From Rebecca billardiae RCC1528 (Eukaryota; Protista; Haptophyta), in NCBI GenBank assembly GCA_965240325.2, contig OZ251255.1, positions 62,001-126,000 on the forward strand: DNA of 64,000 bases, in the 5' to 3' direction. The position numbers and the translations under genes were made by a program. Each line of letters starts with the position of its first letter. Position 1 is the first letter of the stretch. The notes below the pieces were generated by a model that was not told where the DNA came from, made no database searches, and saw only the letters and a list, made by a program, of their open reading frames with translations. Positions 26,030 through 47,211 of the stretch are shown here, piece by piece.

Positions 26030-29000
26030 ATGGCGAGGACCACGGGTACCCGCTGCTCGCCAGCGCGGCGAGCCCTCTCCACGCTCGTCGTGCTGGCGGC
26101 GATGGGCGCGAATCACATGCCGCGGCATCTGCTCACTCGACTGGGGATCCTCGACGGCCCAGAGCCCGCCGCCTCCGCCCCGCCCCTCGGCCCCGCGCTC
26201 GCGCGCGCCCAGACCATCACCGCCGTGAAGGTGGGCCTCTACCACGCGTGCGTGCTCACGGACACGGGCAAGGTGAAGTGCTGGGGCGAGGCGGAGTGGG
26301 GGGCGATCGGCACCGGGGATATGTCCAACCGCGGGGACGGCCCGGGCGAGCTCGGCCTGGCGCTGCCGTACGTCGAGCTCCCGAGCGGCCTCAGCGCCAC
26401 GCAGCTCTCCGTCGGCGCGTACCACAACTGCGCCATCCTCTCGGACAGCACGCTGCGCTGGTGCGTGCGCGCCGCGCGCAGCGCGACGGCGCGGGGCGCT
26501 GGCGCGCGTGCCGCCGCGCGATGCCGCTCACGTGGCGCCACGTACCCGCCACCCGCCCGCGCGCGCCTTCCCCTGCGCGCGCGTGCGCTTGCGCCCGCCC
26601 GCGCGCGCGCTTTGCGCGCCGCGCGCTCGCAGCTGGGGCGACGGAGGGTACGGGCGGTGTGGCACGGGCGCGACGACGGACATCGGCGACGAACCCGGCG
26701 AGATGGGCAACGCGCTCGTCGCCGTCAACCTCGGCACCGGCCTCACCGCCAAGGCCGTGAGCTGCGGCAGGCGGCACACGTGCGTGTTGGTCTCACAGAC
26801 CGACAGGCTCAAGTGCTTCGGGGACAACCAGCGGGGGGAGCTGGGGTACGGCGACGGCTTCGAGCGCGGCGATGTCCCCTCGAACCTGGGCGACGTGCTG
26901 CCCTACCTCGACCTCGGCACGGACGGCTACGCCGCGCCGCACGCCGTGCTCAAGCTGAGCGCGCGCTTCTACCACAACTGCGTCGTGCTGGCAGGGGGAC
27001 TCAAGTGGTGCGTGTGTGTGTGCAACGCGCACGCGCGCGATGGCTGGCTGGCCGGCCGAGCGGCGGGCGCTCGCGCCGCGCCGGGCAGCTCGCGGGGTGC
27101 GAGCGCGCCGCTTGGTCGTGTGCACCAGCGCGCGGCGTGGGCGCGCCCGAGGCCTCGCGGGCCGCTCGGCCCCGGCGCACTGGCTGACGCGGCCGCGCCC
27201 CCTCCGCCTGTGCCTCGCGCCTTCTTTTTCGATTCTTCTTCGCGTCCTCTTCGCTGCCTCCTCCGACGTGCCGCCGCGCGGCGCAGCTGGGGCCTGAACA
27301 GCCACGGGCAGCTGGGGTACAACGACAAGCTCGACCGCGGCGGCACGCCCTCCGAGACGGGCGACAAGCTGCCGTTTGTCGAGGTGGGCGTGGCGGCGGC
27401 GAGCCTGCAGTCCGTGAGCTTGAGCGAGCTGCACACGTGCCTGCTGCACAGCGGCGGCAAGGTGAAGTGCTGGGGCCAGGGCGCGGACGGACGGCTCGGG
27501 TACGGCGACACGGCGGACCGCGGGTTCTCGGGCGGGATGGGCGACGCGCTGCCCGACGTCGACCTCGGCTGGGGCCTCAGCGCACTCGAGGTGCAGCCCG
27601 GCACCATCAGCACGTGTGCGCGGCTCAACACTGGCACGATCAAATGGTGTGCGCGCGCGCCCGCGCTCGCGCGTGCGTAGCCACGGGCACACGCGCACGC
27701 GCACGGCGTGCCGCACGCGCGCCCTCGCCTGGGCGCGGCCGCACCGGCAGTGGCGACCCTTGGGCGCGCCGCCCGGCCCCGCGCTGCGTGCACCCGCCGA
27801 CCGAACCGCGCGCCTCCTCTCACTCCCGCCGCGCGCGCGCCCGCCCGCAGCTGGGGCGGCAACGACCGCGGCCAGCTCGGGTACGAAGACACGAGCTCCC
27901 GCGGCGGCGGCAGCGGCGAGATGGGCGCTTCGCTGCCCACCGTCCCGCTGGGCTCGGGGCGCACCGTGGCCGCGTTCGACACGCTCGACAAGTCGGTGTG
28001 CGCGCTGCTCGACGACGGCACCGTCAAGTGGTGCGCGCACCGCCTGCGCGGCACACCGCCTGCCCGGCGCGCGCGGCGCGCGGTGGTGGGCTGGGCACGT
28101 GCCGCGGCGGCGAGCGAGGGCGGGGGGTGGGCGCGGCGCGCGTGCGCCTGCCCGCGCGGCGGGCGCGGGGGCGCGTCGACGCGCGTCAGACGGCACAGCC
28201 TGCCGCCGTGCCGCCGCGCCGCGTGTGGAGACGGCCGCTGCCTGCATGGCCACGCACGCGTGCGCCGCGCGCCGCGCTACGCCTCACGCACCCTCGCCCC
28301 CGCGCCGTGCCGGCCCGACCCGCCTTGCGCCAACGCCATGCAGCTGGGGCGAGGACGCCAAGGGAGAGCTCGGGCAGGGGAGCCCCGACAACATCGGCTT
28401 CGCGCCCGGCTCGATGGGCGATGCGCTGCCGCCGGTCGAGATCCTGCCGCCGCAGCCGCCCTCGCCGCCGCCCTCGCCTCCACCGAGTCCGCCGCCCTCA
28501 CCGCCGCCGTCACCCCCGCCTTCGCCGCTGCCGTCGCCGCCGCCATCGCCGCCGCCATCGCCGCCGCCGCGACCTCCTCCGAGCCCACCGCCGCTGCCTC
28601 CGCCGCCATCGCCGCCTCCGCGCCCGCCGAGCCCGCCGCCGTCGCCGCCGCCGTGCCCGCAGCTCGAGGCCCACCCGCTGTGGGTGGGCTGCGGCAGCAC
28701 GTGCACGCAGATCTCGACCGAGTTCGAGTACGTGTGCGGCACCATCCCCACCGAGGTGGCGCACTTCTCCTCGCTCACGCTGCTCGACCTCGAGGCGAAC
28801 CTGCTGACGGGCACGCTGCCCACCGAGCTGGGCGCGATGACGCAGCTCAAGTACGAGATCGACGTGGAGGCCAACCCGATCTCGGGCACGATCCCGACGG
28901 AGCTGGGCCGGCTGAGCCTGCTCTGGCTGCTCATCTTCACCAACACGCCGCTCACCGGCACCCTCCCGACCGAGCTCGGCGGGCTGAGCGACCTGATGCA

Positions 29001-32000
29001 TTTGTGCGCGCGCGTTGCGTTGCGCGTTGCGCGACGCGTGCCGCGTGCCGCGTGCGCGTGCGCCCTCCGCGTTGCCGCGGACTCACGCATGCCCCCGCGG
29101 CGCCCCCGTGCGCGCAGCCGGCTTGCGGACGTGAGTGGCGTGACCGGCACTGTCCCGAGCGGCATGCTCACGCTGCCCGACATGACCTCCGTGCAGCTCG
29201 CCAACTCGGGGCTGTGCGGAGGGCCGTACTCGTTCACGCGCTCGGGGGCGACGTACACCTTCCCGCCGTGCCCCAGCCCGCCGCCTTCGCCGCCCGGCCC
29301 TCCGCCGTCGCCGCCGCCACCACGCCCGCCGCCCAGCCCGCCGCCGAGCCCGCCACCGCCGTCTCCTCCGCCGAGCCCGCCGCCGAGCCCGCCACCGCCG
29401 AGCCCGCTGCCGTCGCCGCCGCCCAGCCCGCCGCCACCGTCACCGCCGCCGAGCCCACCGCCGAGCCCGCCACCGCCATCGCCGCCGCCGAGCCCTCCGC
29501 CGAGCCCTCCACCGAGCCCGCCGCCGAGCTCGCCGCCCAGCCCTCCGCCGTCACCACCGCCATCGCCGCCACCAGCGCCGCCACCGCCCAGCCCGCCGCC
29601 TTCGCTGCCACCGAGCCCCCCGCCGTCGCCGCCACCGAGCCCGCCGCCGAGCCCGCTTCCGTCGCCGCCACCTGCGCCACCGCCCCCGAGGCCTCCGCCA
29701 TCGCCGCCACCCATCCCGAACCCGCCGCCCTCACCGCCGCCGTCACCCCCGCCTTCGCCGCTGCCGTCGCCGCCGCCATCGCCGCCGCCATCGCCGCCGC
29801 CGCGACCTCCTCCGAGCCCACCGCCGCTGCCTCCGCCGCCATCGCCGCCTCCGCGCCCGCCGAGCCCGCCGCCGTCGCCGCCGCCGTGCCCGCAGCTCGA
29901 GGCCCACCCGCTGTGGGTGGGCTGCGGCAGCACGTGCACGCAGATCTCGACCGAGTTCGAGTACGTGTGCGGCACCATCCCCACCGAGGTGGCGCACTTC
30001 TCCTCGCTCACGCTGCTCGACCTCGAGGCGAACCTGCTGACGGGCACGCTGCCCACCGAGCTGGGCGCGATGACGCAGCTCAAGTACGAGATCGACGTGG
30101 AGGCCAACCCGATCTCGGGCACGATCCCGACGGAGCTGGGCCGGCTGAGCCTGCTCTGGCTGCTCATCTTCACCAACACGCCGCTCACCGGCACCCTCCC
30201 GACCGAGCTCGGCGGGCTGAGCGACCTGATGCATTTGTGCGCGCGCGTTGCGTTGCGCGTTGCGCGACGCGTGCCGCGTGCCGCGTGCGCGTGCGCCCTC
30301 CGCGTTGCCGCGGACTCACGCATGCCCCCGCGGCGCCCCCGTGCGCGCAGCCGGCTTGCGGACGTGAGTGGCGTGACCGGCACTGTCCCGAGCGGCATGC
30401 TCACGCTGCCCGACATGACCTCCGTGCAGCTCGCCAACTCGGGGCTGTGCGGAGGGCCGTACTCGTTCACGCGCTCGGGGGCGACGTACACCTTCCCGCC
30501 GTGCCCCAGCCCGCCGCCTTCGCCGCCCGGCCCTCCGCCGTCGCCGCCGCCACCACGCCCGCCGCCCAGCCCGCCGCCGAGCCCGCCACCGCCGTCGCCT
30601 CCGCCGAGCCCGCCGCCGAGCCCGCCACCGCCGAGCCCGCTGCCGTCGCCGCCGCCCAGCCCGCCGCCACCGTCACCGCCGCCGAGCCCACCGCCGAGCC
30701 CGCCACCGCCATCGCCGCCGCCGAGCCCTCCGCCGAGCCCTCCACCGAGCCCGCCGCCGAGCTCGCCGCCGAGGCCGCCACCGCCGTCGCCTCCGCCGAG
30801 CCCGCCGCCCAAGCCCCCTCCGCCGACCCCGCCGCCTTCGCCGCCGCCCAGCCCTCCGCCGTCGCCACCGCCGTCGCCGCCACCGCCAAGGCCTCCGCCG
30901 ACCCCGCCACCACGACCGCCCAGCCCACCGCCGTCGCCCCCGCCGCGCCCACCTCCCAGCCCGCCACCTGCGCAGCCGCCACCGAGCCCGCCGCCGAGCC
31001 CGCCTCCGTCGCCGCCACCTGCGCCGCCGCCACCGAGCCCGCCGCCGAGCCCGCCTCCGAGCCCGCCACCTGCGCCGCCGCCGCCGAGCCCGCCGCCGAG
31101 CCCGCCTCCGTCGCCGCCACCTGCGCCGCCGCCACCGAGCCCGCCGCCGAGCCCGCCTCCGAGCCCGCCACCTGCGCCGCCGCCACCGAGCCCGCCGCCG
31201 AGCCCGCCTCCGTCGCCGCCACCTGCGCCGCCGCCACCGAGCCCGCCGCCGAGCCCGCCTCCGTTGCTGCCACCTGCGCCGCCGCCACCGAGCCCGCCGC
31301 CGAGCCCGCCTCCGTCGCCGCCACCTGCGCCGCCGCCACCGAGCCCGCCGCCGAGCCCGCCGCCGAGCCCGCCACCTGCGCCCCCGCCACCGAGCCCGCC
31401 GCCGAGCCCGCCTCCGTCGCCGCCACCTGCGCCGCCGCCACCGAGCCCGCCGCCGAGCCCGCCTCCGTCGCCGCCACCTGCGCCCCCGCCACCGAGCCCG
31501 CCGCCGAGCCCGCCGCCGTCGCCGCCACCTGCGCCGCCGCCACCGAGCCCGCCGCCGAGCCCGCCTCCGTCGCCGCCACCTGCGCCGCCGCCACCGAGCC
31601 CTCCGCCGAGCCCGCCTCCGTCGCCGCCACCTGCGCCGCCGCCACCGAGCCCGCCGCCGAGCCCGCCTCCGTCGCCGCCACCTGCGCCGCCGCCACCGAG
31701 CCCGCCGCCGAGCCCGCCTCCGAGCCCGCCACCGGCGCCGCCGCCACCGAGCCCTCCGCCGAGCCCGCCTCCGTCGCCGCCACCTGCGCCGCCGCCACCG
31801 AGCCCTCCGCCGAGCCCGCCTCCGAGCCCGCCACCTGCGCTGCCGCCACCGAGCCCGCCGCCGAGCCCGCCTCCGTCGCCGCCACCTGCGCCGCCGCCAC
31901 CGAGCCCGCCGCCGAGCCCGCCTCCGTCGCCGCCACCGGCGCCGCCGCCACCGAGCCCGCCGCCGAGCCCGCTTCCGTCGCCGCCACCCGCGCCGCCGCC

Positions 32001-35000
32001 ACCGAGCCCTCCGCCGAGCCCGCCTCCGTCGCCGCCACCGGCGCCGCCGCCACCGAGCCCGCCGCCGAGCCCGCCTCCGTCGCCGCCACCTGCGCCGCCG
32101 CCACCGAGCCCGCCGCCGAGCCCGCCTCCGTCGCCGCCACCTGCGCCGCCGCCACCGAGCCCGCCGCCGAGCCCGCCTCCGTCACCGCCACCTGCGCCGC
32201 CGCCACCGAGCCCGCCGCCGAGCCCGTCTCCGTCGCCGCCACCTGCGCCGCCGCCACCGAGCCCGCCGCCGAGCCCGCCTCCGTCGCCGCCACCGGCGCC
32301 GCCGCCACCGAGCCCGCCGCCGAGCCCGCCTCCGTCGCCGCCACCCGCGCCGCCGCCACCGAGCCCTCCGCCGAGCCCGCCTCCGTCGCCGCCACCTGCG
32401 CCGCCGCCACCGAGCCCGCCGCCGAGCCCGCCTCCGTCGCCGCCACCCGCGCCGCCGCCACCGAGCCCGCCGCCGAGCCCGCCTCCGTCGCCGCCACCTG
32501 CGCCGCCGCCACCGAGCCCGCCGCCGAGCCCGCCTCCGTCGCCGCCACCGGCGCCGCCGCCGCCGAGCCCGCCGCCGAGCCCGCCTCCGTCGCCGCCACC
32601 CGCGCCGCCGCCACCGAGCCCTCCGCCGAGCCCGCCTCCGTCGCCGCCACCGGCGCCGCCGCCACCGAGCCCGCCGCCGAGCCCGCCTCCGTCGCCGCCA
32701 CCTGCGCCGCCGCCACCGAGCCCGCCGCCGAGCCCGCCTCCGTCGCCGCCACCGGCGCCGCCGCCACCGAGCCCGCCGCCGAGCCCGCCTCCGTCGCCGC
32801 CACCCGCGCCGCCGCCACCGAGCCCTCCGCCGAGCCCGCCTCCGTCGCCGCCACCGGCGCCGCCGCCACCGAGCCCGCCGCCGAGCCCGCCTCCGTCGCC
32901 GCCACCCGCGCCGCCGCCACCGAGCCCGCCGCCGAGCCCGCCTCCGTCGCCGCCACCTGCGCCGCCGCCACCGAGCCCGCCGCCGAGCCCGCCTCCGTCG
33001 CCGCCACCTGCGCCGCCGCCACCGAGCCCTCCGCCGAGCCCGCCTCCGTCGCCGCCACCTGCGCCGCCGCCACCGAGCCCTCCGCCGAGCCCGCCTCCGT
33101 CGCCGCCACCTGCGCCGCCGCCACCGAGCCCGCCGCCGAGCCCGCCTCCGAGCCCGCCACCGGCGCCGCCGCCACCGAGCCCTCCGCCGAGCCCGCCTCC
33201 GTCGCCGCCACCGGCGCCGCCGCCACCGAGCCCTCCGCCGAGCCCGCCACCGAGCCCGCCACCTGCGCTGCCGCCACCGAGCCCGCCGCCGAGCCCGCCT
33301 CCGTCGCCGCCACCTGCGCCGCCGCCACCGAGCCCGCCGCCGAGCCCGCCTCCGTCGCCGCCACCGGCGCCGCCGCCACCGAGCCCGCCGCCGAGCCCGC
33401 CTCCGTCGCCGCCACCCGCGCCGCCGCCACCGAGCCCTCCGCCGAGCCCGCCTCCGTCGCCGCCACCGGCGCCGCCGCCACCGAGCCCGCCGCCGAGCCC
33501 GCCTCCGTCGCCGCCACCTGCGCCGCCGCCACCGAGCCCGCCGCCGAGCCCGCCTCCGTCGCCGCCACCTGCGCCGCCGCCACCGAGCCCGCCGCCGAGC
33601 CCGCCTCCGTCACCGCCACCTGCGCCGCCGCCACCGAGCCCGCCGCCGAGCCCGTCTCCGTCGCCGCCACCTGCGCCGCTGCCACCGAGCCCGCCGCCGA
33701 GCCCGCCTCCGTCGCCGCCACCGGCGCCGCCGCCACCGAGCCCGCCGCCGAGCCCGCCTCCGTCGCCGCCACCCGCGCCGCCGCCACCGAGCCCTCCGCC
33801 GAGCCCGCCTCCGTCGCCGCCACCGGCGCCGCCGCCACCGAGCCCGCCGCCGAGCCCGCCTCCGTCGCCGCCACCCGCGCCGCCGCCACCGAGCCCGCCG
33901 CCGAGCCCGCCTCCGTCGCCGCCACCTGCGCCGCCGCCACCGAGCCCGCCGCCGAGCCCGCCTCCGTCGCCGCCACCGGCGCCGCCGCCACCGAGCCCGC
34001 CGCCGAGCCCGCCTCCGTCGCCGCCACCTGCGCCGCCGCCACCGAGCCCGCCGCCGAGCCCGCCTCCGTCGCCGCCACCTGCGTCGCCGCCACCGAGCCC
34101 TCCGCCGAGCCCGCCTCCGTCGCCGCCACCTGCGCCGCCGCCACCGAGCCCTCCGCCGAGCCCGCCTCCGTCGCCGCCACCTGCGCCGCCGCCACCGAGC
34201 CCGCCGCCGAGCCCGCCTCCGAGCCCGCCACCGGCGCCGCCGCCACCGAGCCCTCCGCCGAGCCCGCCTCCGTCGCCGCCACCGGCGCCGCCGCCACCGA
34301 GCCCTCCGCCGAGCCCGCCTCCGAGCCCGCCACCTGCGCTGCCGCCACCGAGCCCGCCGCCGAGCCCGCCTCCGTCGCCGCCACCTGCGCCGCCGCCACC
34401 GAGCCCGCCGCCGAGCCCGCCTCCGTCGCCGCCACCTGCGCCGCCGCCACCGAGCCCGCCGCCGAGCCCGCCTCCGTCGCCGCCACCCGCGCCGCCGCCA
34501 CCGAGCCCGCCGCCGAGCCCGCCTCCTTCACCGCCACCTGCGCCGCCGCCACCGAGCCCGCCGCCGAGCCCGTCTCCGTCGCCGCCACCTGCGCCGCCGC
34601 CACCGAGCCCGCCGCCGAGCCCGCCTCCGTCGCCGCCACCGGCGCCGCCGCCACCGAGCCCGCCGCCGAGCCCGCCTCCGTCGCCGCCACCCGCGCCGCC
34701 GCCACCGAGACCGCCGCCGAGCCCGCCTCCGAGCCCGCCACCTGCGCTGCCGCCACCGAGCCCGCCGCCGAGCCCGCCTCCGTCGCCGCCACCCGCGCCG
34801 CCGCCACCGAGCCCGCCGCCGAGCCCGCCTCCGTCGCCGCCACCTGCGCCGCCGCCACCGAGCCCGCCGCCGAGCCCGCCTCCGTCGCCGCCACCTGCGC
34901 CGCCGCCACCGAGCCCGCCGCCGAGCCCGCCTCCGTCGCCGCCACCTGCGCCGCCGCCACCGAGCCCTCCGCCGAGCCCGCCTCCGTCGCCGCCACCTGC

Positions 35001-38000: not shown

Positions 38001-41000
38001 CCTCGACGCGGGCGAGGGCCTCGCGCTGGCCTTTGCGTTCGGCGCCGGCGGCGCCGCCGTGCCGGCCGAGTGGGCCAACGGCACGCACGCGCTCGTGCGC
38101 ACGCCGCCGTCGGCGGAGGGGCGCGCGGCGGTGCGCGTCTCGCTCAACGGCGGCGCGCAGTACGAGCCCGCGGCCGGCGGCGCCGAGGGCGGCGCCGAGG
38201 GCGGCGCGTGGTTCGAGTTTATCGGGCTGCACGCGCCCGAGCCGCTCGGCGCGGCGTTCGACGGCGCGCTGCGCGTCGTGCGCGTGTGGTTTGGGCAGCA
38301 GCCGACCGACCGCGCGCGCATGGGCTCGGCGCTCGCGCCGTGCGAGTCGGTGCTCGACGACGACACGGTCGCGCTGCTGCGCGGGCCGGCGGTGGCGGCG
38401 GCCGCGCCCGCGCCGCGCTGCTACTGGGCGGACGACTCGACGCTCGTCGCGCAGCTCGGCAGCGGCACGCTCGCGCGGCCGGGCGCGCGCATCGGCGTGC
38501 GCGGCGGCGTGCTCGCGCCCGCCGCGTGCGCGCCCGCGCCGTGCGCCGAGCCGTCGCTGCTCGCGCCCGCCGCGGCCGTCGCCATCGACGCGGACGCGCC
38601 GTGCGAGCTCGGCGCGGCTGACGGCGGCGGCGGCGGCGCGTGCGCCGCGCCGCTCGCGGCGCTCTCGGGGCCGGCGGCGCTCTCCTCCGCGTGCGGCGCC
38701 GACGCGGACGGCAGCGTAACGCTCGACGGCAGCGGCTCGAGCGGCGGCGGCGTCGTGCCGCTCGACTTTGAGTGGCGGCTGGTGCCGCCCGCCTCGGAGG
38801 ACGGCGGCGCGGCCGAGGCGGCGAACGCGGCGCTCGCGGCGCTGCCGCCGCGCACGCCCACGCTCACGCTCGGCGCGGGGGGCGCGGCGCCGCTGCCCGG
38901 CGCGGGCGACTTCACCGTCGCGCTGCGCGTGCGCTCCTCACTGCTCGGCCTCGTGTCTGCGCCCGCGCACCACGTCGTGCGCCGCCCGGCCGCGCGCGCG
39001 CCGCGGCTGGCGGTCGGCGGCCCGGCGGTGCGCGTCGCGCGCGCGGGCTCCGAGCTGCTGCTGCACGCCGAGGCGGCGGCGTGCGGCGCGGGCGGCGCGC
39101 TCGGCTTCGCGTGGCGGCTTGTCTCGGTCGCGCCGCTCGGCGCGCCCAACGCGACGGCGCTCGGCGCGGCGGGCGCGGCCGCGCTCGGCGCGCGCGCGCC
39201 CGAGCTCGGCGGCGGCGCGGGCGCGCGCGCGGCGCTGCTGCTGCGGCCGCACGCGCTCAGCGCGGGCTTTGCGTACGAGCTCGAGGTGCGCGCGTGGGTG
39301 GCGGCGGCGGCGGACGGCGCGTCGAGCACGGCGCGCGTGCGCGTGCTCGTGGCCGCGCAGCCGGTGCGCGCCGTGCTCGGCGCCGCGTCGCTCGACGTGC
39401 GCGCGAGCGCCGCCACGCCGCTGCTCCTGCAGCCGGCGCAGCGCGCGAACGGCACGGCGAACGGCACGGCGGCGGTGCCCGGCTGCGAGCCCTTCGTGCT
39501 CGACGCCTCCGCCTCCGCCGACCCGGACCAGCCGGACGGCGCCGGCTCGCTCCGATTTGCGTGGGCGGCGCGCTCGCTCGATCTCGGCGCCGAGATCGCC
39601 CTGCCGGCGTGGGTTGACACGTCGCGCGCGGCGCTGGCGGTGCCGGCGGGCGCGCTGGGCGTGGGCACGTACGCGCTCGAGGTGACCGTCTCGCGCGCCG
39701 CGGCCGCGGCCGGCGCCGCCGCCGCGCACGCCGTCGCGCGCGCGACCGTGCGCGTGGTGCCGTCCGCGCGCCCGCTGCCCGCCATCGCCATCGCGCCGCC
39801 GCGCGGCGGCCGCCCGCCGAGCGCGGCGTGGGCGCTGCCGTCGAAGCGGCTGAGCGTGCGCGCGAGCGTCGGCCTCGGCACGCCCGACCCCGCCGCGCCG
39901 GGCGGCGCGTGGGCGTGGGCCGAGCGCGACTTCAACCTCAGCTGGAGCGCGCGGCCGCTCAGCGGGCCCGACGCCGACGCCGACGGCGCGGGCGGCGCGG
40001 ACGGCGGCGCGGTCTCCGCGCCCGACCTGTCGGACGCGGCGCGCGTGACGACGACGGGCGCGCTCGGCGCGGTGCTCGCCTTCCGCTCGGGCGCGCTGGC
40101 GCCCGGCGGCCGCTACGCGCTCACGCTCAGCGCGACGCTCGCGCCCGCCACCGCCGAGCGCGCGGCCGCGGCCGCGCGGCTGGGCGTGCTCGGCGCCTCT
40201 GCCGCGGCGACGCTCGTGCTGGCGCTCAACCGGCCGCCGCACGGGGGCGGCGTGGGCGTGGAGCCGCGCGCGGGCGTGGCGCTGCGCACGCCCTTCGCAC
40301 TCGCCGCGCCCGGCTGGAGCGACGACGACGACGACGACCTGCCGCTCTCCTACGCGTTTGGGCACGCGGCCGACGCCGCCGACGGCGCCGCCGCCGAGGG
40401 CACCGCGCTGGCGGACGCGCGCGCGGCGCCGTGGCTGCTGCGCGTCGCGCTGCCGCCGGGCAACGGCTCGGTGCTCGTGGACGTGTGCGACGCGCACGGC
40501 GCGTGCGCGCGCGCCGCGACGAGCGTCGCCGTCGCGCACCCCGCCGCCGCCGCAGCCGCCGCCGAGTTTGCGGCCGCGCTCGGCGCCGCGCGCGCGAGCG
40601 CGGCCGCGGGCCAGCTCTCGAGCGCGCGCCGGCAGCTGCGCGCGCTCGCTGAGATGCTCGGCGCGGGCGCGGGCGGGAACGGCACGCTCGCCGCCGCGGC
40701 CGCGTCGCGCGAGCTGCTCGACCTCGGCGCGCAGCTGCTCGCCGCCGAGGCGGCGGGCGGTGGCGGCGGCTCGAGCGCGGCGGCGCGCGCGCAGGCGGCG
40801 GGCGCGCTCGCCGCCGTGCTCGCCGCCGCGCCCGCCGCCGCGCTCGACGGCGCCGCGCGCGCGTCGGCGCTCGCGCAGGCGGGCGCGATCGCCGCCGCCG
40901 CCGCGGAGTCGGGGCTCGGCGCCACCGCCGCCGCCGACCTGCTCGGCGCGATGGACGCCGCGCTCGCGCGCGGCGGCGGCGCGGGCGCGGACGCGGACGC

Positions 41001-44000
41001 GGCCGCGGACGCCGAGGCAATCGGCGCGGCGGCGCGCGCGGCCGCGTCGGCGCTGGCGGGCGCGCTGCTCGCCGGCGCGGCGCCGGGCGAGCCGCCCGCG
41101 TCCGCGGCGGGCGTCGCCGTCGCCGTCGCCGCCGCGCGCGCCGCCGCGTCGGCGCTCGAGGCGCAGGGCGCGACGCTCGGCGGCTCAGACGGCGGCGGCG
41201 TTGGCGGCGGCGGCGGCGGCTTGGTCTCGGTGCCGCCTGGCGTGCTGAGCGGCTCGGGGCTGGCGTTGGGCGCGCTGGGCGGCGGCGTGGACCTCGTGGT
41301 GTACTCGGTCGCGCGCAACGTGCGGCCCGGCGCGGCGCTGCCGCTCGGCGCCAACGGCACCGCCCTCGCCTCGCGCGTCTTCTCCGTCACGCTCTGGCCC
41401 GCGCCCGGCGGCGGCGGCGGCGGCGGCGGCGCGGGCGGCGCTGAGGCTCTGAGCATCGCCGGACTGGAGGCGCCCATCGTGCTCGGGCTGCCAAGGCGCG
41501 GCGGCGTGGGGCTCCCCGCCGCGCCGCCGCTGCAGTACGCCCCGAGCGGCACGTGCGCCGAGTGGCTGCCGCCCGGCTGCGCGCACGGCGCGGACGCGGG
41601 CGCGGACGCGGACGCTGCGGAGGCGGCGGCGGCGGCGGCGGCGGCGGAGGCGGGCTGCGCGGTGTGCGGCGGGCGCGGCGCGTGCGTGCGCGAGCACCCG
41701 GGCGCGAACGGCACGGGCGGCGGCGGCGGTGGCGCGTGCGCGTGCGAGCCGCCCTTCTACGGCCCCGGCTGCGGCGCGCTCGACGCGTGCCACTGGTGGG
41801 ACGAGGCCGCGGCCGCGTGGTCCACCGCGGGCTGTGAGACGGTGGCCGCCGGGCCTGCAGCCGCCGCCGCCGCCGACTCGTCGCTGCTCTGGTGCGCGTG
41901 CACGCACCTCACCGAGTTTGCGGGGATCGCCGTGCAGCTGCCGAGCACCGAGGCCGCGGCGGCGGAGGAGGCGGCGGGCGCGGTGCGCCCCAACACCTTC
42001 TCCGCCGCGCACGCCGCCGCCGTCCTCGCCACGCCCGCCGCCGGGCAGCGCGACAACCCGACCGTGTACCGGCTGGTGTACCTGCTCGGCGCGGCGAACG
42101 CGCTCGCGCTGCTGGCGGGCGCGGCGCTGGACGCGCGCGCGCGCCGGGAGTACCTCGCGTGGCGCGCGCGCGAGGTGGGCACGGCGGGGCACGTCTCGAA
42201 GCTCGCGGCGGCGCGCGAGCGGCTGCAGCACGAGTCGACGCAGGCCACGCCCGCGGGCGGGCGCGGCACGCTCGCCGCCGCGACCGCGCTGACCGACGCG
42301 GCGGCGGCGGTGGGCGCGCGCGGCGAGCGCGCGCGCGCGCGCGCGCGCGAGCGCCGCACCTCCGACGGCGCCGACGAGGCGGAGGCGGAGGCGTCGGACG
42401 GCGGCGGCGCGCGCCCCCGCCGCGCGAGCGCGCGCGTGCGCCCGCTCCGCCGCTCGCCCCGCCACTCGGCGGCGCCGCCCTCGCCGCAGGCCTCGGACGG
42501 CGCCTCGGCCACGCAGCTGCGGCTGGCGCCGCAGCTGCAGCGCTCCTCCTCCGTCGACACGGCGACGAGCGAGGGCGCGGGCGGCGGCGGCGCCTCGCCG
42601 CCGCGCGCGCGCGCCGACGGCGGCGGCTCAGAGCCAGCGACGCGCGGCGGCGGCGGCGGCGGCAGCCCGGCGCGCTCGGCCGCGCCGGGCTCGGCGCGCG
42701 CCTCCTCCCCCGCCGCGTTGGACATCCGGCTCGCGCCCGCGCCCGCGCCCGCGCCCGCGCGCCGCGGCGGCGCGCGCGCCGCGGTCGGCCCCGCCGACGA
42801 CGACTCGGCCGGCGGCGCTCGCTGCCGCAGCGCCACCGAGCGTGTCACGCCGACGCGCTGCTCCCCGCAGCCCCCGCCGGCGGTGGCGGCGCTGCGCGGC
42901 TCCGCGCGCAGCTCGGCGCGCTCATCGCCGCTGCCGCTCGCGCATGAGCGGTTTGGAAAGTCCGCGCGCTGGGACTCGGGCTCGGGGCGACGCGCCGCGC
43001 CGCCCAGCTCGCGCGCGCAGGCGTGGCGCGCGCGCGCGCGTGACGCGCTGCTGGCCGTGGCCGACGGTCACACGGCGCTGGGGCTGTTGCTCGCGCCCGC
43101 CGAGGCGTTCCCGCGCCGCGCCGAGCTCGTGCAGACGCTCTTCAACATGGGCGCGCTGCAGCTGGTCGCCGAGTGCGTGCTCTACTCGGACGGCGGCGCA
43201 CAGCGCGCCCACGCCGCCGGTGCGACGGCGGAGGCGGCGGCCGAGGGCGGCGAGGGCGGCGGCGCGGAGGGCGTGCGCCCGCTGACCGTCGCGCTCTACG
43301 CCGCGCTCGGCGCGCTGCTCGCCGGCCCCGCGCTCGGCCTCTTCAACGCGCTCTGGGCGACGTGCGGCGCGCGCGCGCGCGCCGCGCCCGCGCGCCGGCT
43401 GTACCGCGGGCTGCACGCGCTCGTCTCGCAGCGCGCCACCGAGGCGGAGGCGGCGGCGGCGCGCGCGGCGCGCGCCAAGGCGGCGCTCGCGGCGCGCGGC
43501 GCGGCGGGCGACGCGCCGCCCTCGCCCGCGCGCGCGCCCTGGCGCCGCGCCGCCGCCTCGCCGCGCGCCGCGGTGCTGCAGGCCGCGAGCACGCTGCTCG
43601 CGTGCGCGCGCACCTCGCGCGGCGGCGGCGCGCCGCAGCCGACGCCGGCGCGCGGCAGCGAGGCCGCGCCGCCCGACGAGGCGGACGACGCTGCGGGCGG
43701 GTGCGGCTCGACGGCGCGCGCGGTCGCGGGCGCGCGCGCACCCGCCGGCGGCGCGCCGCCGGCCGGCCGCCTCGCGCCGCTGCGCGTGGCGGTGCCCTCC
43801 GCCTCCGCCTCCGCCTCCGCCTCGTCCGCGCCGTCGCTCTCGCCGCCGCGCGCCGCCGGCGCGCGGCAGCAGCCGCGCGCGGGCTCGGAGCGCGGCTCGC
43901 CGCACCGCGCGGCCGTGCCGCGCACGCTGCCGCCGCTCGGCACGCCGCCCTCGGCGGGTGGCGGCGTGCACTCGCGCACGCCGCCGCCGCCGCCGCCGAC

Positions 44001-45503
44001 GACCGTGCCGCCGCCGCCGCCGCGCGCGCCGCACGCGCCCGCCGCCGCGTCGCCGCCGCTCGGCGCGCGCCGGCCGAGCACCCTGCCGCCGCCCACCGCC
44101 GCCGCCGCTCAGCGGCAGCCGCCGGGCGGCTGGCGCAGCGAGGGTGCCGAGGGCGGCGAGGAGGGAGCCGAGCCCCTCAGCGTCGTGGTCGTGCCCATCG
44201 GCACGCCCACGCCCACGCCCGCGACCGCGGCCTCGCTGGTGCCGGCGGCGGACGCGCCCGCGGCGGCGGGCGCGGCGGCGGCGCGTCCGCCCGGTCCGCC
44301 CTGGGCGTGCCGCGCGGCGGAGGCGCTGCCGCCGCCGGGCGCGCAGCGCGCGCCGCGGGCGCACGCCGAGCGGCCGCAGAGCGCGGCGGGCGCTGCGGCG
44401 GCGGCGCCGGGCGGCCGCGCCCACGGCCGCGTGCTGCCGTGCGCGCCGCTGCGGCCGGCCGGCGCCGCCGCCGCGGGCGGCGCGCCCGAGCTGCTCGCAC
44501 CGCCGCTGGCGGCGCGCGCGCCCGCGCGGCCCACCTCGGCCGCGCCCGCGCTGCGCTCGCCCGGCGCCGGCGCAGCGGCCGCGCGCGCCGCGCGCGCCTC
44601 CGCCCTCTCCGACGTCTCGGCGTGCTCCGAGCTCTCCGGAGCGTCCGGACAGTCCGGAGCGTCCGGAGCGTCGGGCTGCTCCTCGGGGGACGAGGACGCG
44701 GCCGAGGGCGTGCGAATTGCGCCGCAGCTCTCCGAGGGGGCGGCGCAGCCGCAGGGGCCGGCGCAGGCGGGGGCGGAGGTGGGGGCGGAGGCCGACGCCG
44801 ACGCCGGGCGGCGCGTCGAGGCGGAGGCGGAGGCGGAGGCGGCAGCGGAGGCGGACGGGCGGCGCGCCGCGGTGCGCGCCGCCCACTGCGCGGCGTCGCC
44901 GCGGCCGAGCGCTGCCGAGCCGGCGGCGGCGGCGGCGGCCGCGTGCGGAGGCGAGCCCGAGCCCGAGCCCGAGGTCGAGGTCGAGGTCGTGGGCCCCGCG
45001 AGTGACGCGGACTTCTTCGGGCCCGCCATTGTGCTCGGGCACACGGCGCCGCGCTCGGCCGGCGGCACGAGCGCGCGCGGCTCGGCGAGCGGCGCGGCGG
45101 CGGGCTCGGTGCCAGGCTCGGCGCGCGGCGGCGCGGGCGCGACGCCGCGCGCGACGCCGGGCTCGTGGCGCCAGCCGCAGCACGCGGCGCCCGGCTCGGC
45201 GCGCTCCGGCGGCAGCGGCGCGTGCAGCGCGCGGCGCGCCGTCGCGCCCGGCAGCGCGCGCGGCGCGTGCGCCGAGCCGGCCGCACGGCTGGTTGCGGCG
45301 GGCTCCGCGCGCATCAGCGCGGCCGCGATCGCCGCGGCCGCGGCAGAGGAGGACGACGACGACGACGACGGCGACGTGGACGCGCCCGCGCGCCCGCCGC
45401 CGCCGCCGCCGCCGCGCGCGCCGCCCGCCGCGCCCGACTCGCGCCGCGCCTCCGTCGGCTCCACCGCCACCGCCGCGCCGCGCCGCGGCCCGCGCCCGCC
45501 AAC

Positions 45504-45549
<46 letters not shown>

Positions 45550-45694
45550 CGCGCGCGCGCGCCCGCGCGGCGCCGCTCGCGCAACCCGGCGCCGCCGCTC
45601 GCGCCGCGGCCGAGCGCGATCGCGCGCGCGGGCTCGGCCGCGGACGTCGGCCCCCCGCAGACCAGCGGCCGGGTGGGCATCGACGGCCGCCGCC

Positions 45695-45725
<31 letters not shown>

Positions 45726-47211
45726 GCCGGCAGCTGGGAGCACGCGCCGAGCCACCATCGCCGCCACCTCCGGCGCCGCCGCCGCCGCCGCCGCCGCCGC
45801 GGCGGCGGAGGCGGTCGCGGGCGGGTACAGCGCGCGCGGCGGGCTGCACGGCGCGGGCAGCAGCAGCCGCAGCGCCGCCGACCTGCGCGCCGCCGTGCCC
45901 AGGGCCGTCGGCGGCGTCGCGACGCGCGGCGAGCTGCGCGCGGCCGCGCACCGCGCCGCGCGGCGCGGCGGCTGGGACCAGGTGGTCGCGCCGGTGACGG
46001 CCGACCTGCCGCTCGGGCTGGCGGGGCGCGCGGCGGACGGCGCGTCGCCGCGCGCGGGCGCGTCGCTCACGCCGCCGTCGCTCGGCTCGAGCCGCGCGAC
46101 GCCGCCGGGCGGCGGCAGCGCGGCCAACTCGCCGCCGCCCTCGCCGCCGCGCCCGGCCTCGCCCAGCCCGCCCGCGCGCGCGCGGCCGGCGCTGCCGCCC
46201 CTCACGCCGCGCCGCGCCGCCGCCGCCGCCGCCGCCGCCGCGCCCGCCGCCGCCGCCGAGCGCGCCGCGCCGCCGCGCGCGCCGAGCGCGCCGAGCGCGC
46301 CGCCCGCCGCGCCCGCGGCCGCCGCCGCGCCCGCGGGCAGCGGCGGCGGCGCGCCGCGCCGCCGCCCGTCGCTCCGGCTGCTGCGCGGCCGCGGCAGCAG
46401 CAGCCGCAGCAGCAGCAGCCAGCGGCAGCAGGACGGCGCGGCGGCGCAGCAGCCGGGCGGGTGCGGAGCCGGCGCGGGCGCGCGCGCGCCCACCGGCACC
46501 TCCTCGGGCTCCGTCAGCGCGCGCTCGCACAGCAGCGCGTCGGACGACGCCGCCTCGGTCGCCTCGGCCGAGCTGCACGCGCTGCGCGTCGCCTTCAAGA
46601 TGTACGACCTCTCGGGCAGCGGCGCGCTCGACGCGGCCGAGGTGGGCGTGCTCATGACCGAGCTGGGCGAGCCGCTCACACTCATCGAGCGGCGCAGGCT
46701 CACGCACGAGCTCGCGGCGGTGCCGCTGCGCGGCGCGGGGCAGGCGCCCGTCGCGGGTCGCGTGCTTGAGTCACAGCTCGTGCGCTGGTACGCGGCGCGG
46801 CGCGAGGCGCACGCGCGCCGCCGGCGCCGGCGCGGCGGCGGCGCCGCGGCCGGCGCGGCCGACGACGACGACGTCACGTCGGGCCGCGCGCACTGGCGGC
46901 TGCGCGCGCTCGCCGCGTGCGCGTGGGCCGCGATGCTCGGCACGTTCGTCGGGCTGTGCGCCCTCGTGATCGTGTACGGCCGCCTCTTCGGCGAGGCCCA
47001 GACGCGCGCGATGATCGGCTCGTGGGGCGGCGCGCTGCTCGGCGCGCTGCTCGTGCACGAGCCCGCGCTGCTGCTCGCCGCGCACGCGGGGCCCAGCCTC
47101 GCGCACGCCGCCAACCGGCTGGTCGCGCGCTCGGACCGCGCGCTCGTCGGCGCGATGGGCGCGGCGATCGCGCGCGCGCTCAGCGCGCTGCACTTCATCT
47201 TCCGCGGATGA
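26030..47211 (+). CDS. Giant (~6,660 aa) polycystin-1/REJ-like receptor: signal, RCC1 propeller, 2x LRR, Ser-Pro stalk, IPT/TIG, PKD/REJ, EGF, GPS, TMs, EF-hand. Introns 26461-26632, 27008-27286, 27647-27850, 28031-28343, 29004-29117, 30237-30350
   Basis: Spliced length of 19,986 nt is in frame. Seven xCWG/CFG RCC1 blades; plant-type LRR (LTGTLPTELG); PSAGPVRGGT.VT IPT; LDASASADPD and NRPPHGG..V.P..G.AL.T.F...A.GWSD REJ motifs; CACEPPFYGPGC EGF; CHWWDE...WS..GC...CACTHL|TEFA GPS; AFKMYDLSGSGALDAAE EF-hand; PKD1-like YGRLFG...W...EP TM region. Confidence 0.85.
28489..30770 (+). repeat. Near-perfect internal tandem duplication (period 1,233 bp) containing the LRR cassette and its intron
   Basis: 28489-29537 recurs at 29722-30770, including the 114-nt intron. 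Confidence 0.95.
30960..37270 (+). repeat. Coding minisatellite, 51-bp unit (SPPPSPPPSPPPAPPPP), >100 copies, with a 678-bp higher-order duplication at the 3' end
   Basis: Unit cctgcgccgccgccaccgagcccgccgccgagcccgcctccgtcgccgcca; variant block GACACCCCTGAG at 36381 and 37059. Confidence 0.97.

What the first reader, a model, noticed from the sequence alone, without database searches (positions are those of the whole stretch)
26030..47211. ~6,660-aa self-cleaving polycystin-1-like receptor carrying an RCC1+LRR head on a ~0.7-um polyproline stalk
Seen: a single spliced frame joins an RCC1 propeller, plant-type LRRs, ~2,250 aa of SPPP repeats, IPT, PKD/REJ, EGF, an intact GPS HL|T site (~41905-41913), PKD1-like TMs and an EF-hand (~46580-46670). 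No PLAT or TRP channel domain is evident. Known: GPS/GAIN domains autoproteolyse, PPII helix rises ~0.31 nm per residue, and SPn motifs are hydroxyproline-glycosylated in plants and green algae. Inference: a chimera of LRR-extensin and polycystin, i.e. a long-reach, sheddable mechano- or ligand sensor with its own Ca2+ sensing. I do not recognise this architecture as described.
Basis: partly seen in the sequence, partly recalled or inferred. Interest (0 to 1): 0.75.

Follow-up and report, generated by a model that had tools for sequence, protein, structure and literature searches.

The report
Giant stalked RCC1/LRR-headed REJ-GAIN surface receptor
A very GC-rich haptophyte alga (Pavlovales) encodes a single surface protein of about 6,660 residues: a propeller-plus-LRR head on a serine-proline rod about 0.7 micrometre long, anchored by the self-cleaving, channel-less front half of a polycystin-1-type receptor. 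It is real, but it is one mosaic member of a family of about 100 such genes, not a one-off.

Summary
Seven exons (26030-47211, + strand; 6,661 codons by arithmetic) encode, in order:
- a signal-peptide-like start
- a 7-blade RCC1 propeller
- two nearly identical plant-type LRR units
- a 2,282-residue (SPPP)3-APPPP array
- IPT/TIG
- REJ
- a GAIN domain (fold match Z 19 to adhesion-GPCR GAIN domains) with the HL|T site at 41905-41913
- five membrane spans
- one canonical cytoplasmic EF-hand loop

There is no PLAT, PKD repeat or channel domain. The 'PKD1-like' nature of the membrane spans and the EGF module are not supported by sequence.

One gene is well supported by in-frame continuity, GC3 of 0.90-1.00 throughout the last exon, four identically placed phase-2 GT-AG introns, three diverged paralogues, and a Diacronema lutheri relative with the same order in one open frame.

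It is not unique. The genome holds at least 103 REJ/GPS loci. Pavlovales relatives exist in public data but are annotated short. This scan already reported sibling genes on other DNA of the same genome (s1-341030, s1-363204).

This copy is a mosaic: its RCC1 head, LRR unit and base each have a different closest paralogue.

The nearest described design is Chlamydomonas MST3/Mstax, a poly-hydroxyproline rod on a PKD2-like anchor.

Function (tethered adhesion or force sensor versus structural hair) is inferred, not shown.

The parts
26030..26460 (+). Exon 1: start codon, signal-peptide-like N-terminus (charged start, then a 13-residue hydrophobic core), RCC1 blade 1 and the start of blade 2
   Evidence: Translation. 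Pfam RCC1_2 47.5 bits, RCC1 22.8 bits. The donor TG|GTGCGT is at 26460/26461.
26461..26632 (+). Intron 1 (172 nt, GT-AG, phase 2), splitting the K/R-C|W-G motif of a blade
   Evidence: Sequence. No codon periodicity: GC at the three positions is 0.83/0.84/0.88.
26633..27007 (+). Exon 2: RCC1 blades 2-3
   Evidence: Pfam RCC1 32.2 bits, RCC1_2 32.9 bits. 90% identical to two loci on contig C13, 60% to C37, 53% to C3.
27008..27286 (+). Intron 2 (279 nt, GT-AG, phase 2, same position in the blade)
27287..27646 (+). Exon 3: RCC1 blades 4-5
   Evidence: Pfam RCC1_2 29.8 bits, RCC1 23.3 bits
27647..27850 (+). Intron 3 (204 nt, GT-AG, phase 2; holds an in-frame stop)
27851..28030 (+). Exon 4: RCC1 blade 6
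   Evidence: Translation shows the WGxNxxGQLG motif. The Pfam match is weak (E 0.022).
28031..28343 (+). Intron 4 (313 nt, GT-AG, phase 2)
28344..28653 (+). Start of exon 5: RCC1 blade 7, running in frame straight into the first SP linker (about 28405-28653)
   Evidence: Translation. The same blade-7-to-SP junction is found in the long open frames of paralogues C37, C3 and C13.
28654..29274 (+). LRR unit 1: Cys-capped, about five plant-type LRRs, with an in-frame GT-AG intron at 29004-29117
   Evidence: Pfam LRR_1 29.5 bits. Intron sequence. Against the neighbouring gene the exons are 99.1-99.4% identical and the intron 95.6%.
29275..29886 (+). SP linker 2 (about 200 residues, 67% Pro)
29887..30507 (+). 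LRR unit 2 (intron at 30237-30350). It is part of a tandem duplicate: 29723-30778 equals 28490-29545 with about one mismatch.
30466..37311 (+). Main SP array: 2,282 residues, about 100 units of SPPP-SPPP-SPPP-APPPP, with one block duplicated at the end
   Evidence: TRF: 51-nt period x 127.7 copies, 90% match. The 95 identical 17-residue units are encoded by 18 DNA versions. The unit type is homogeneous from end to end.
37357..38154 (+). IPT/TIG region: one significant TIG (37933-38154), a second weak one, and a third seen only by eye
   Evidence: Pfam TIG E 5.3e-9. Second copy E 0.011.
39487..40557 (+). REJ module (the matched parts; the true extent is probably larger)
   Evidence: Pfam REJ E 7.7e-8 (profile positions 100-208) and 8.7e-6 (339-420)
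40531..41940 (+). GAIN domain: a helical subdomain followed by a beta-sandwich, with an EGF-like six-cysteine insert at 41656-41790
   Evidence: AlphaFold2 model: pLDDT 79.4, pTM 0.73. The top nine Foldseek hits are all GAIN domains, E 1.7e-6 and weaker. VIA-align gives Z 19.3 with 290 residues aligned to BAI3 and Z 19.1 to BAI2.
41788..41913 (+). GPS motif. The predicted cleavage is between Leu (41908-41910) and Thr (41911-41913).
   Evidence: Pfam GPS 23.4 bits. The paralogue profile hits adhesion-GPCR GPS motifs in the PDB at E 3.7e-6. CxCxHLT is kept in 29 of 29 paralogues. In the model, HLT sits in the turn between the last two strands.
42064..42129 (+). Membrane span 1
   Evidence: Hydropathy. 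Conserved in paralogues.
43117..43356 (+). Membrane spans 2 and 3 (43117-43185 and 43282-43356), with a short outer loop between them
   Evidence: The block is conserved in 18 paralogues.
46606..46641 (+). Canonical 12-residue EF-hand loop (D-x-S-x-S-G-x-L-D-x-x-E). The partner loop downstream is degenerate.
   Evidence: Pfam EF-hand_6 E 2e-3. Aligns to the EF-hand pair of the CCMP2436 relative.
46900..47091 (+). Membrane spans 4 and 5 (46900-46989 and 47011-47091), followed by a tail of about 39 residues. The stop codon is at 47209-47211.
   Evidence: This module is found at 65 or more loci, each inside the same long frame as a GPS.

Best explanation
**What it is**
This is one seven-exon gene for a surface protein of about 6,661 residues. 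It belongs to a Pavlovales-specific family of stalked, channel-less REJ-GAIN receptors.

**Shown or directly read from the sequence**
- The order of parts: signal peptide, 7-blade RCC1 propeller, two LRR units on SP linkers, a 2,282-residue SPPP array, TIG, REJ, a GAIN domain with an invariant HL|T site, five membrane spans whose flanking charges fit an N-out/C-in topology, and two long disordered cytoplasmic loops. The second loop carries one canonical EF-hand.

**Inferred mechanism**
- The array forms a polyproline-II rod of about 0.7 micrometre, probably hydroxylated and glycosylated. The rod holds the binding head far from the membrane.
- The GAIN domain cuts itself. This leaves a fragment of about 4,895 residues non-covalently attached to a 1,766-residue membrane fragment.
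- Binding or drag on the head pulls on this joint. That either sheds the rod or exposes the tethered TEFAG... strand.
- The five-span bundle and its loops pass the event on. Cytosolic Ca2+ is read by the EF-hand.

**History of this copy**
The gene is a recent mosaic. Its RCC1 head, LRR unit and base each have a different closest paralogue. That suggests heads are swapped between family members, probably by recombination in the SP repeats.
For: **One gene**
- RCC1 blade 7, both LRR units, the array, TIG, REJ, GPS and the C-terminal module share one frame with no stop.
- GC3 is 0.90-1.00 in every 240-nt window from 37312 to 47208. In the introns GC is 0.77-0.88 at the third position and shows no codon periodicity.
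- Four phase-2 GT-AG introns cut the same blade motif.
- Paralogues on C37, C3 and C13 have RCC1 exon 2 at 60%, 53% and 90% identity. Each carries blade 7, a P-rich array of about 3,000 residues, TIG, REJ, GPS/TM1, TM2-3 and the EF/TM end in a single frame of 5,825-6,023 codons.
- The D. lutheri relative has a signal peptide, a 1,900-residue SP array and the REJ base in one 5,921-codon frame.
- An MMETSP transcript of a CCMP2436 relative spans REJ to the C-terminus.

**Array read as SPPP**
- The 95 identical 17-residue units are encoded by 18 DNA versions.
- Copy spacings are multiples of three.

**GAIN and GPS**

**Family**
- At least 103 REJ loci and at least 103 GPS-TM1 loci.
- At least 65 EF/TM ends.

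**Mosaic origin**
- Closest paralogue by part: RCC1 90% to C13. The LRR is 99% identical only to the neighbouring gene, with the next best at 51%. GPS-TM1 is 76% to C33, and the C-terminal end is 79% to C11.

**No PLAT or channel**
Against: - There is no transcript, protein or localisation data for this gene or genome.
- At about 85% GC, other frames and the opposite strand are also open for up to 3,600 codons. Open-frame length alone proves little.
- The two LRR+SP units differ by one base in about 1,050. That could be a very recent duplication or an assembly artefact.
- The five spans show no detectable sequence similarity to solved PKD1 chains, so a PKD1-like signalling mechanism is only an analogy.
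- The second EF-hand loop is degenerate, and the first scores below Pfam's cut-off.
- In the D. lutheri relative the SP array starts right after the signal peptide with no head at its tip. That fits a structural fibre as well as a 'head on a stalk'.
- Hydroxylation and glycosylation in haptophytes were not tested.
Confidence: 0.5

Rival explanations
1. Same gene and same architecture, but the protein is mainly structural. It would be a membrane-anchored, glycosylated hydroxyproline-rich fibre: a cell-surface or flagellar hair, or a coat element. In that case the REJ-GAIN-5TM part serves only as anchor and release point. This is how MST3/Mstax forms the shaft of Chlamydomonas mastigonemes.
For: - The rod length (about 0.7 micrometre) and the SPPP composition match the 660-800 nm poly-hydroxyproline shaft of MST3/Mstax. 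That protein also has a polycystin-family anchor and a long cytoplasmic tail.
- The D. lutheri relative has no head distal to its array.
- From my own knowledge, not found in the library: Pavlovales are described as bearing fine non-tubular hairs and knob scales.
Against: - About 100 paralogues with varied binding heads (RCC1, LRR) look more like a recognition repertoire than a single structural polymer.
- The HL|T site is invariant in 29 of 29 paralogues, and the cytoplasmic EF-hand/TM module is conserved. Both suggest more than passive anchoring.
- No MST1-like sheath partner was looked for.
Confidence: 0.3
2. The locus is not one gene as assembled. Either the RCC1/LRR head and the REJ base are separate genes fused only by the lack of stop codons at 85% GC, or the assembler joined or expanded loci through near-identical SP repeats.
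For: - Long open frames occur by chance in this composition.
- The three parts have different closest paralogues.
- The LRR+SP unit is duplicated almost perfectly.
Against: - Each part is unique in the genome. A 100% match exists only here; the next best is 90% for RCC1 and 76-79% for the base. So none of the parts is borrowed from another locus.
- The array is one homogeneous unit type from start to end, with no switch point.
- GC3 periodicity is continuous in the last exon.
- The head-array-base order recurs in three diverged paralogues, and the array-base order recurs in an independent D. lutheri assembly.
- The assembly has 41 contigs for 72 Mb, which suggests long reads.
Confidence: 0.07
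3. The gene is a very recent, possibly non-functional by-product of recombination among family members. It is open only because stop codons are rare in this composition.
For: - The composition is a mosaic of different paralogues.
- The LRR unit is 99% identical to the neighbouring gene, intron included.
- There is a near-perfect internal duplication.
- REJ, GPS and EF-hand scores are weaker than in most paralogues and relatives.
Against: - No frameshift occurs across 20 kb or seven exons, and all splice sites are canonical.
- The key motifs are intact: HL|T, the GPS cysteines and the EF-hand loop residues.
- GC3 is 0.90-1.00 throughout the last exon.
- The LRR intron has diverged more than the LRR exons, though the counts are small.
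Confidence: 0.08

Closest known systems
Pavlovales 'REJ domain-containing' / 'EF-hand domain-containing' proteins: Diacronema lutheri KAG8459354.1; Pavlovales sp. CCMP2436 KAJ1635852.1 and KAJ1633484.1
   Same: True homologues, 35-42% identical over REJ-GAIN. They share the base: TIG, REJ, GPS, membrane spans, a long loop, an EF-hand pair and two terminal spans. The D. lutheri and CCMP2436 loci also have an SP array directly upstream.
   Different: The public models are cut short and lack the array. In D. lutheri, 3,751 aa are annotated against a 5,921-codon open frame. No RCC1 or LRR head was seen on these relatives. The D. lutheri array follows the signal peptide directly.
Chlamydomonas MST3/Mstax, and seven related PKD2-like proteins with poly-proline regions and LRR/SRCR/SEA/lectin heads (PMC11015965; bioRxiv 10.1101/2024.12.24.630281)
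   Same: The design is the same. The protein has about 8,000 residues. Binding domains sit at the N-terminus, a poly-(hydroxy)proline PPII rod spans 660-800 nm, a polycystin-family membrane anchor follows, and a cytoplasmic part of more than 1,000 residues ends the chain.
   Different: The anchor there is an incomplete PKD2-type channel domain, completed by SIP and assembled with PKD2. Here it is REJ + GAIN/GPS + five spans with no channel domain. The lineage differs (green alga versus haptophyte), and no sequence relationship was shown. The resemblance is most likely convergent.
Polycystin-1 family (PKD1, PKD1L1-3, PKDREJ, sea-urchin REJ proteins; PMC1934368)
   Same: The REJ module is followed by a GAIN domain with an HL|T GPS just before the first membrane span. 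There is an LRR at the N-terminus, as in PKD1. The five spans have the same in/out order as PKD1's first five.
   Different: There is no PLAT in the first cytoplasmic loop, no PKD repeats, no TOP/channel half (spans 6-11) and no C-lectin or WSC domain. It adds an SP rod, an RCC1 propeller and an EF-hand.
Ectocarpus Esi0130_0068, a male-gamete-specific REJ/GPS protein with 6-7 predicted spans (PMC4700764)
   Same: It is an algal REJ + GPS multi-span surface protein, proposed to act in gamete recognition.
   Different: It has 1,427 aa, no SP rod and no RCC1, LRR or EF-hand. It has a polycystin channel-like hit.
Adhesion GPCRs (BAI, latrophilin, GPR126, CELSR, CD97)
   Same: They are the best structural matches for the GAIN domain (Z 14-19) and for the GPS motif. 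They also follow the logic of a large adhesive ectodomain joined non-covalently to a membrane fragment.
   Different: There is no 7TM domain and no HormR domain. Here the GAIN domain follows a REJ module, as in polycystin-1.
Plant LRR-extensins, and volvocine HRGP rods such as the sexual agglutinins (from my own knowledge)
   Same: Plant-type LRRs are joined to Ser-Pro(n) repeats. The agglutinins are rod-plus-head fibrous adhesins.
   Different: Those proteins are secreted or wall-bound and have no membrane spans. The array here has no tyrosine cross-link motifs and is mostly SP3, not SP4.

Membership tests
Polycystin-1 (PKD1/REJ) family | REJ module | tested here: met
   PF02010 matches in two pieces, E 7.7e-8 and 8.7e-6, both at or above the 25-bit cut-off. 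Paralogues and relatives score up to E 1e-44 to 9e-50.
Polycystin-1 (PKD1/REJ) family | GAIN domain with a GPS (HL|T) immediately before the first membrane span | tested here: met
   Model pLDDT is 79. VIA-align gives Z 19.3 and 19.1 to the BAI3 and BAI2 GAIN domains. GPS scores 23.4 bits. HLT lies at 41905-41913 and TM1 at 42064.
Polycystin-1 (PKD1/REJ) family | PLAT domain in the loop after span 1 | tested here: not met
   There is no PF01477 hit in the gene at E <= 0.01. The genome has only two PLAT loci, neither on this contig. The loop is low-complexity Ala/Arg/Gly/Ser/Pro.
Polycystin-1 (PKD1/REJ) family | C-terminal six-span channel-like half (PKD_channel / TOP domain) | tested here: not met
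   There is no PF08016 hit in the gene. About 30 PKD_channel loci lie elsewhere in the genome, none on contig C39.
Polycystin-1 (PKD1/REJ) family | The first five spans homologous to PKD1 TM1-5 | tested here: inconclusive
   Five spans are predicted, with the same in/out order. A profile of spans 2-3 from 18 paralogues finds no PKD1 chain in the PDB at E <= 10. The segments are short, so a blank result is weak evidence.
Polycystin-1 (PKD1/REJ) family | Autoproteolysis at the GPS | not testable with these tools
   Only the motif, its conservation in 29 of 29 paralogues and the fold are available.
Pavlovales stalked REJ-GAIN-EF-hand family (the family of this genome and its relatives) | TIG-REJ-GAIN/GPS-TM1, the conserved TM2-3 block, a long loop, and an EF-hand followed by two terminal spans, all in one frame | tested here: met
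   Block-by-block BLAST matches to the neighbouring gene and to the C37, C3 and C13 paralogues. Matches to D. lutheri and CCMP2436 proteins.
Pavlovales stalked REJ-GAIN-EF-hand family (the family of this genome and its relatives) | A long Ser-Pro array N-terminal of the TIG/REJ base | tested here: met
   The array here is 2,282 residues. It is about 3,000 residues in C37, C3 and C13, about 5,700 in the neighbouring gene, 1,900 in D. lutheri, and at least 380 in CCMP2436.
MST3/Mstax-type mastigoneme shaft proteins | PKD2-like transmembrane domain that pairs with SIP and PKD2 | tested here: not met
   There is no PKD_channel match in the gene. The anchor is REJ-GAIN-5TM instead.
MST3/Mstax-type mastigoneme shaft proteins | Poly-(hydroxy)proline rod hundreds of nm long between N-terminal binding domains and the membrane anchor | tested here: met
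   The sequence feature is met. Hydroxylation, glycosylation and the PPII conformation were not tested.
Adhesion GPCRs | Seven-span secretin-like domain after the GAIN domain | tested here: not met
   There is no 7tm_2 hit. Five spans are predicted, separated by loops of 330 and about 1,180 residues.
RCC1-like propeller | Seven RCC1 repeats | tested here: met
   Pfam RCC1 / RCC1_2 score above the cut-off in exons 1-3 and weakly in exon 4. Seven (C)WG...G.LG blades can be read in the translation. The closed propeller was not modelled, because the exons were not joined.

The most novel reading that the evidence does not exclude
The roughly 100 stalked REJ-GAIN genes form a combinatorial cell-surface recognition repertoire of Pavlovales. 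Interchangeable heads (RCC1 propeller, LRR, lectin arrays) are shuffled between genes by recombination within the SP repeats. This gene would be a freshly made three-parent mosaic. Each receptor would be a force-gated, self-cleaved tether reporting through a channel-less five-span module and a Ca2+-binding loop. This would be a signalling route from a GAIN domain that needs neither a 7TM nor a polycystin channel, and the first use of an RCC1 propeller as an extracellular ligand-binding head.
Probability: 0.25. Interest if true: 0.8.

Novelty: new variant of a known kind. Interest (0 to 1): 0.6.

Why it matters
If expressed as predicted, this family shows three things.
- The REJ-GAIN 'front half' of polycystin-1 exists as an independent, hugely expanded receptor chassis in a haptophyte, with no channel partner domain.
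- Micrometre-scale proline rods anchored by polycystin-family modules arose in more than one algal lineage. The other case is Chlamydomonas MST3/Mstax.
- Repeat arrays may act as recombination hinges for swapping recognition heads.

It also has practical uses:
- It flags that public Pavlovales annotations cut these genes short. The D. lutheri model is 3,751 residues against a 5,921-codon frame.
- It offers a simple system for asking what a GAIN domain signals to when neither a 7TM nor a channel follows it.

Tried and rejected
- **Single-sequence search of the PDB.** The REJ-GAIN region gave nothing useful. A paralogue profile was needed to see the GPS.
- **Profile of spans 2-3 against the PDB.** No PKD1 hit, so 'PKD1-like TMs' could not be upheld.
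- **Pfam domains.** No PKD repeat, EGF, PLAT, PKD_channel or 7TM. EGF is kept only as a cysteine pattern.
- **The genome search with the 570-residue GAIN query.** Failed twice. A 192-residue GPS-TM1 query worked.
- **Loci for the C-terminal module.** As a result the heads of the two closest-base paralogues (C33, C11) remain unknown, and no model of the EF/TM end was made.
- **Genome-wide RCC1_2 search.** It was swamped by a separate family of hundreds of small RCC1 genes and could not answer that question.
- **Literature searches.** Searches for a description of this family in haptophytes and for Pavlovales surface hairs found nothing relevant.
- **Hidden introns in the long cytoplasmic loops.** Considered and rejected, because GC3 stays at 0.90-1.00.
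- **Chimeric join inside the array.** Considered and rejected, because the unit type is homogeneous.
- **Joined protein.** Exons were searched one by one by reference, and the 6,661-residue length is exon arithmetic.
- **Large word-indexed protein search.** Not used.

Full report
**What is in the sequence**

The window is 64-87% G+C. The + strand is open from 27616 to 47211, a run of 6,531 codons. At this composition open frames are cheap: other frames and the opposite strand are open for up to 3,600 codons. The case therefore rests on content, not length.

Pfam found the following:
- RCC1 repeats in two frames between 25925 and 27677
- LRRs
- one IPT/TIG (E 5e-9)
- REJ in two pieces (E 8e-8 and 9e-6)
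- a GPS motif
- a weak EF-hand

There was no PLAT, PKD repeat, PKD_channel or 7TM hit.

**Gene model**

Three-frame translation and the DNA at the junctions give a start codon at 26030 with a signal-peptide-like N-terminus. Seven RCC1 blades follow.

Four introns interrupt the blades: 26461-26632, 27008-27286, 27647-27850 and 28031-28343. Each has GT-AG ends and phase 2. Each splits the same K/R-C|W-G motif, as exon ...TG | GTGCG...CAG | C-TGG-GG. Uninterrupted blades show the same KCWG motif.

Blade 7 begins at 28344. It runs in frame straight into the first SP linker, then the LRR units, the array and everything downstream.

Each LRR unit holds one further in-frame GT-AG intron of 114 nt (29004-29117 and 30237-30350).

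Exon arithmetic gives 19,983 coding bases, or 6,661 codons. I searched every exon separately, by reference.

**Is the long last exon really coding?**

In the frame of the long open reading frame, third-position G+C is 0.90-1.00 in all 42 windows of up to 240 nt from 37312 to 47208. This includes the two low-complexity cytoplasmic loops. The four RCC1 introns show 0.77-0.88 at the third position and no periodicity. So no sizeable hidden intron lies in that stretch.

The main array spans 30466-37311:
- 2,282 residues, 74% Pro and 18% Ser.
- About 100 copies of SPPP-SPPP-SPPP-APPPP.
- TRF reports a 51-nt period x 127.7 copies at 90% match.
- The 95 copies with the identical 17-residue unit are encoded by 18 different DNA versions, including AGC/TCG serine switches.
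- Copy spacings are multiples of three. This is what selection on the SPPP reading predicts.
- The unit type is the same from the first to the last copy, so nothing suggests a chimeric join inside it.
- At 0.31 nm per residue, the main array would span about 707 nm.

**The GAIN/GPS joint**

- Scanned alone, the GPS reaches Pfam's cut-off (23.4 against 22.5 bits).
- All 29 paralogous loci that I cut out keep CxCxHLT.
- A profile of 28 paralogues hits the GPS of adhesion GPCRs in the PDB (E 3.7e-6).

An AlphaFold2 model built on that alignment has pLDDT 79.4 and pTM 0.73. It shows a helical subdomain followed by a beta-sandwich, with HLT in the turn before the last strand.
- Foldseek's top nine hits are all GAIN domains.
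- VIA-align gives Z 19.3 with 290 residues aligned to BAI3 and Z 19.1 to BAI2. The top ten rows are all GAIN domains.

The fold and the motif for autoproteolysis are therefore present. Cleavage itself is untested.

**Membrane part**

Hydropathy and paralogue conservation give five spans:

| Span | Coordinates |
|---|---|
| 1 | 42064-42129 |
| 2 | 43117-43185 |
| 3 | 43282-43356 |
| 4 | 46900-46989 |
| 5 | 47011-47091 |

Arg-rich flanks sit on the predicted cytoplasmic side of every span. This fits N-out/C-in, with two disordered cytoplasmic loops of about 330 and 1,180 residues.

The EF-hand loop (46606-46641) lies in the second cytoplasmic loop. It has the canonical D-x-S-x-S-G-x-L-D-x-x-E pattern. 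Its partner loop is degenerate.

There is no PLAT and no channel half. A profile of spans 2-3 finds no PKD1 chain in the PDB. 'PKD1-like' therefore describes the topology only.

**A family, not a one-off**

- The genome (72 Mb, 41 contigs) has at least 103 REJ matches in open frames of 2,000-21,000 codons.
- It has at least 103 GPS-TM1 loci.
- It has at least 65 EF/TM ends in the same frames.
- The next gene downstream on the same strand (C39:118774-148095, 9,774 codons) has one LRR unit, a pure SPPP array of about 5,700 residues, and the same base.
- RCC1 exon 2 has four relatives elsewhere. For three of them (C37, C3, C13) I fetched the loci. Each has blade 7, a P-rich array of about 3,000 residues, TIG, REJ, GPS/TM1, TM2-3 and the EF/TM end in one frame of 5,825-6,023 codons, with no LRR unit like ours.

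This recurrence at 53-90% identity is the strongest argument that head and base belong to one gene.

**Relatives elsewhere**

The best hits among 1.84 billion representatives are only 35-42% identical, and they are Pavlovales:
- Diacronema lutheri KAG8459354.1
- Pavlovales sp. CCMP2436 KAJ1635852.1 and KAJ1633484.1
- an MMETSP transcript

All have REJ-GPS ... EF-hand pair ... two terminal spans; the D. lutheri protein also has a TIG. D. lutheri is 73% G+C (PMC8379373). The window's genome is thus most likely another Pavlovales.

The public models are short. At the D. lutheri locus the frame is open for 5,921 codons. It begins with a signal peptide and a 1,900-residue SP array immediately upstream of the annotated start. 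The CCMP2436 locus also has an SP array, followed by an assembly gap, just upstream.

**This copy is a mosaic**

| Part | Closest paralogue |
|---|---|
| RCC1 exon 2 | C13 genes, 90% |
| LRR unit | neighbouring gene only, 99% (next best 51%) |
| GPS-TM1 | C33 (76%), C11 (67%) |
| EF/TM end | C11 (79%), C33 (74%) |

- Against the neighbouring gene, the LRR exons are 99.1-99.4% identical and the equal-length intron 95.6%.
- The RCC1-type paralogues C37, C3 and C13 are only 59-60% identical at GPS-TM1 and 43% (C13, C37) at the EF/TM end.
- The LRR+SP unit was then duplicated in tandem: 28490-29545 equals 29723-30778 with about one mismatch.
- I read this as recent head shuffling between family members, plausibly through the SP repeats. 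The near-perfect duplicate should still be checked against raw reads.

**How it probably works, and what it resembles**

Two things are shown. The first is the order of parts. The second is a GAIN fold with an intact, conserved HL|T site.

The mechanism is inferred, in these steps:
1. A rod holds a binding head about 0.7 micrometre out from the membrane.
2. The protein cuts itself into a fragment of about 4,895 residues and one of 1,766 residues.
3. Force or ligand acts on that joint.
4. The event is relayed by the five-span module, with Ca2+ read by the EF-hand.

The main rival is a purely structural hair or coat fibre.

The closest described design is Chlamydomonas MST3/Mstax. It has about 8,000 residues: N-terminal lectins, a 660-800 nm poly-hydroxyproline shaft, a PKD2-like anchor completed by SIP, and a 1,600-residue cytoplasmic tail. 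Seven further Chlamydomonas proteins have LRR, SRCR or SEA heads and poly-proline regions. The anchor here is of a different type (REJ-GAIN-5TM, no channel).

REJ/GPS multi-span proteins in algae are known from Ectocarpus (PMC4700764). I found no paper describing this Pavlovales family.

**Earlier notes from this scan**

The scan has already reported sibling genes on other DNA of this genome. These are an LRR-head version (s1-341030) and a lectin-array version (s1-363204). It also noted the neighbouring gene's five-span block (s1-358131). My results agree with those notes and add three things: the RCC1-headed subtype, the mosaic origin of this copy, and the D. lutheri evidence.

**Verdict**

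The finding is a new variant of a known kind, and a further, mosaic member of a family this scan has already met.

Noticed in passing
G000 contigs C31, C35, C34, C25, C20 (e.g. C31:245478-256768): A search with the RCC1_2 family gave 3,116 first-look candidates. All 150 that were scored pass the cut-off, nearly all in open frames of 450-750 codons and often in tandem. Earlier notes of this scan describe about 390 intronless F-box/RCC1 genes. The RCC1 head studied here differs from those: it has four introns and a signal peptide.
   Followed up: partly
L044:4051-21813 (Diacronema lutheri JAGTXO010000041.1, reversed): The public protein KAG8459354.1 (3,751 aa) is annotated short. The frame is open for 5,921 codons. 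It starts with a signal peptide and a 1,900-residue SP array just upstream of the annotated start. A second P-rich stretch at 10261-10560 was removed as an 'intron'.
   Followed up: partly
window 56774-64000, continuing to G000:C39:148095: The next gene on the same strand is a 9,774-codon paralogue. It has one LRR unit 99% identical to ours, a pure SPPP array of about 5,700 residues (about 1.8 micrometre as PPII), and stronger REJ (E 9e-20) and GPS (E 3.6e-9) matches.
   Followed up: partly
G000:C16:881490-881921 (-): This is the only PKD_channel match that lies in a very long open frame (6,448 codons). It could be a full-length polycystin-1-like gene with a channel half, unlike the roughly 100 channel-less ones.
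   Followed up: no
G000:C37:39235-40575 (-) and C32:532088-533242 (-): REJ matches lie inside open frames of 21,132 and 16,357 codons. If these are real genes, their products would be among the longest known proteins.
   Followed up: no
G000:C13:2753264-2753635 (-): A second RCC1-head copy, 90% identical to ours, carries an in-frame TGA. It lies 20 kb from its intact twin at C13:2733259. It may be a broken duplicate.
   Followed up: no
window 28490-30778: A 1,233-nt tandem duplication of the SP-LRR-SP unit differs by about one base in 1,050. This is either a very young duplication or an assembly artefact. It should be checked against raw reads.
   Followed up: partly
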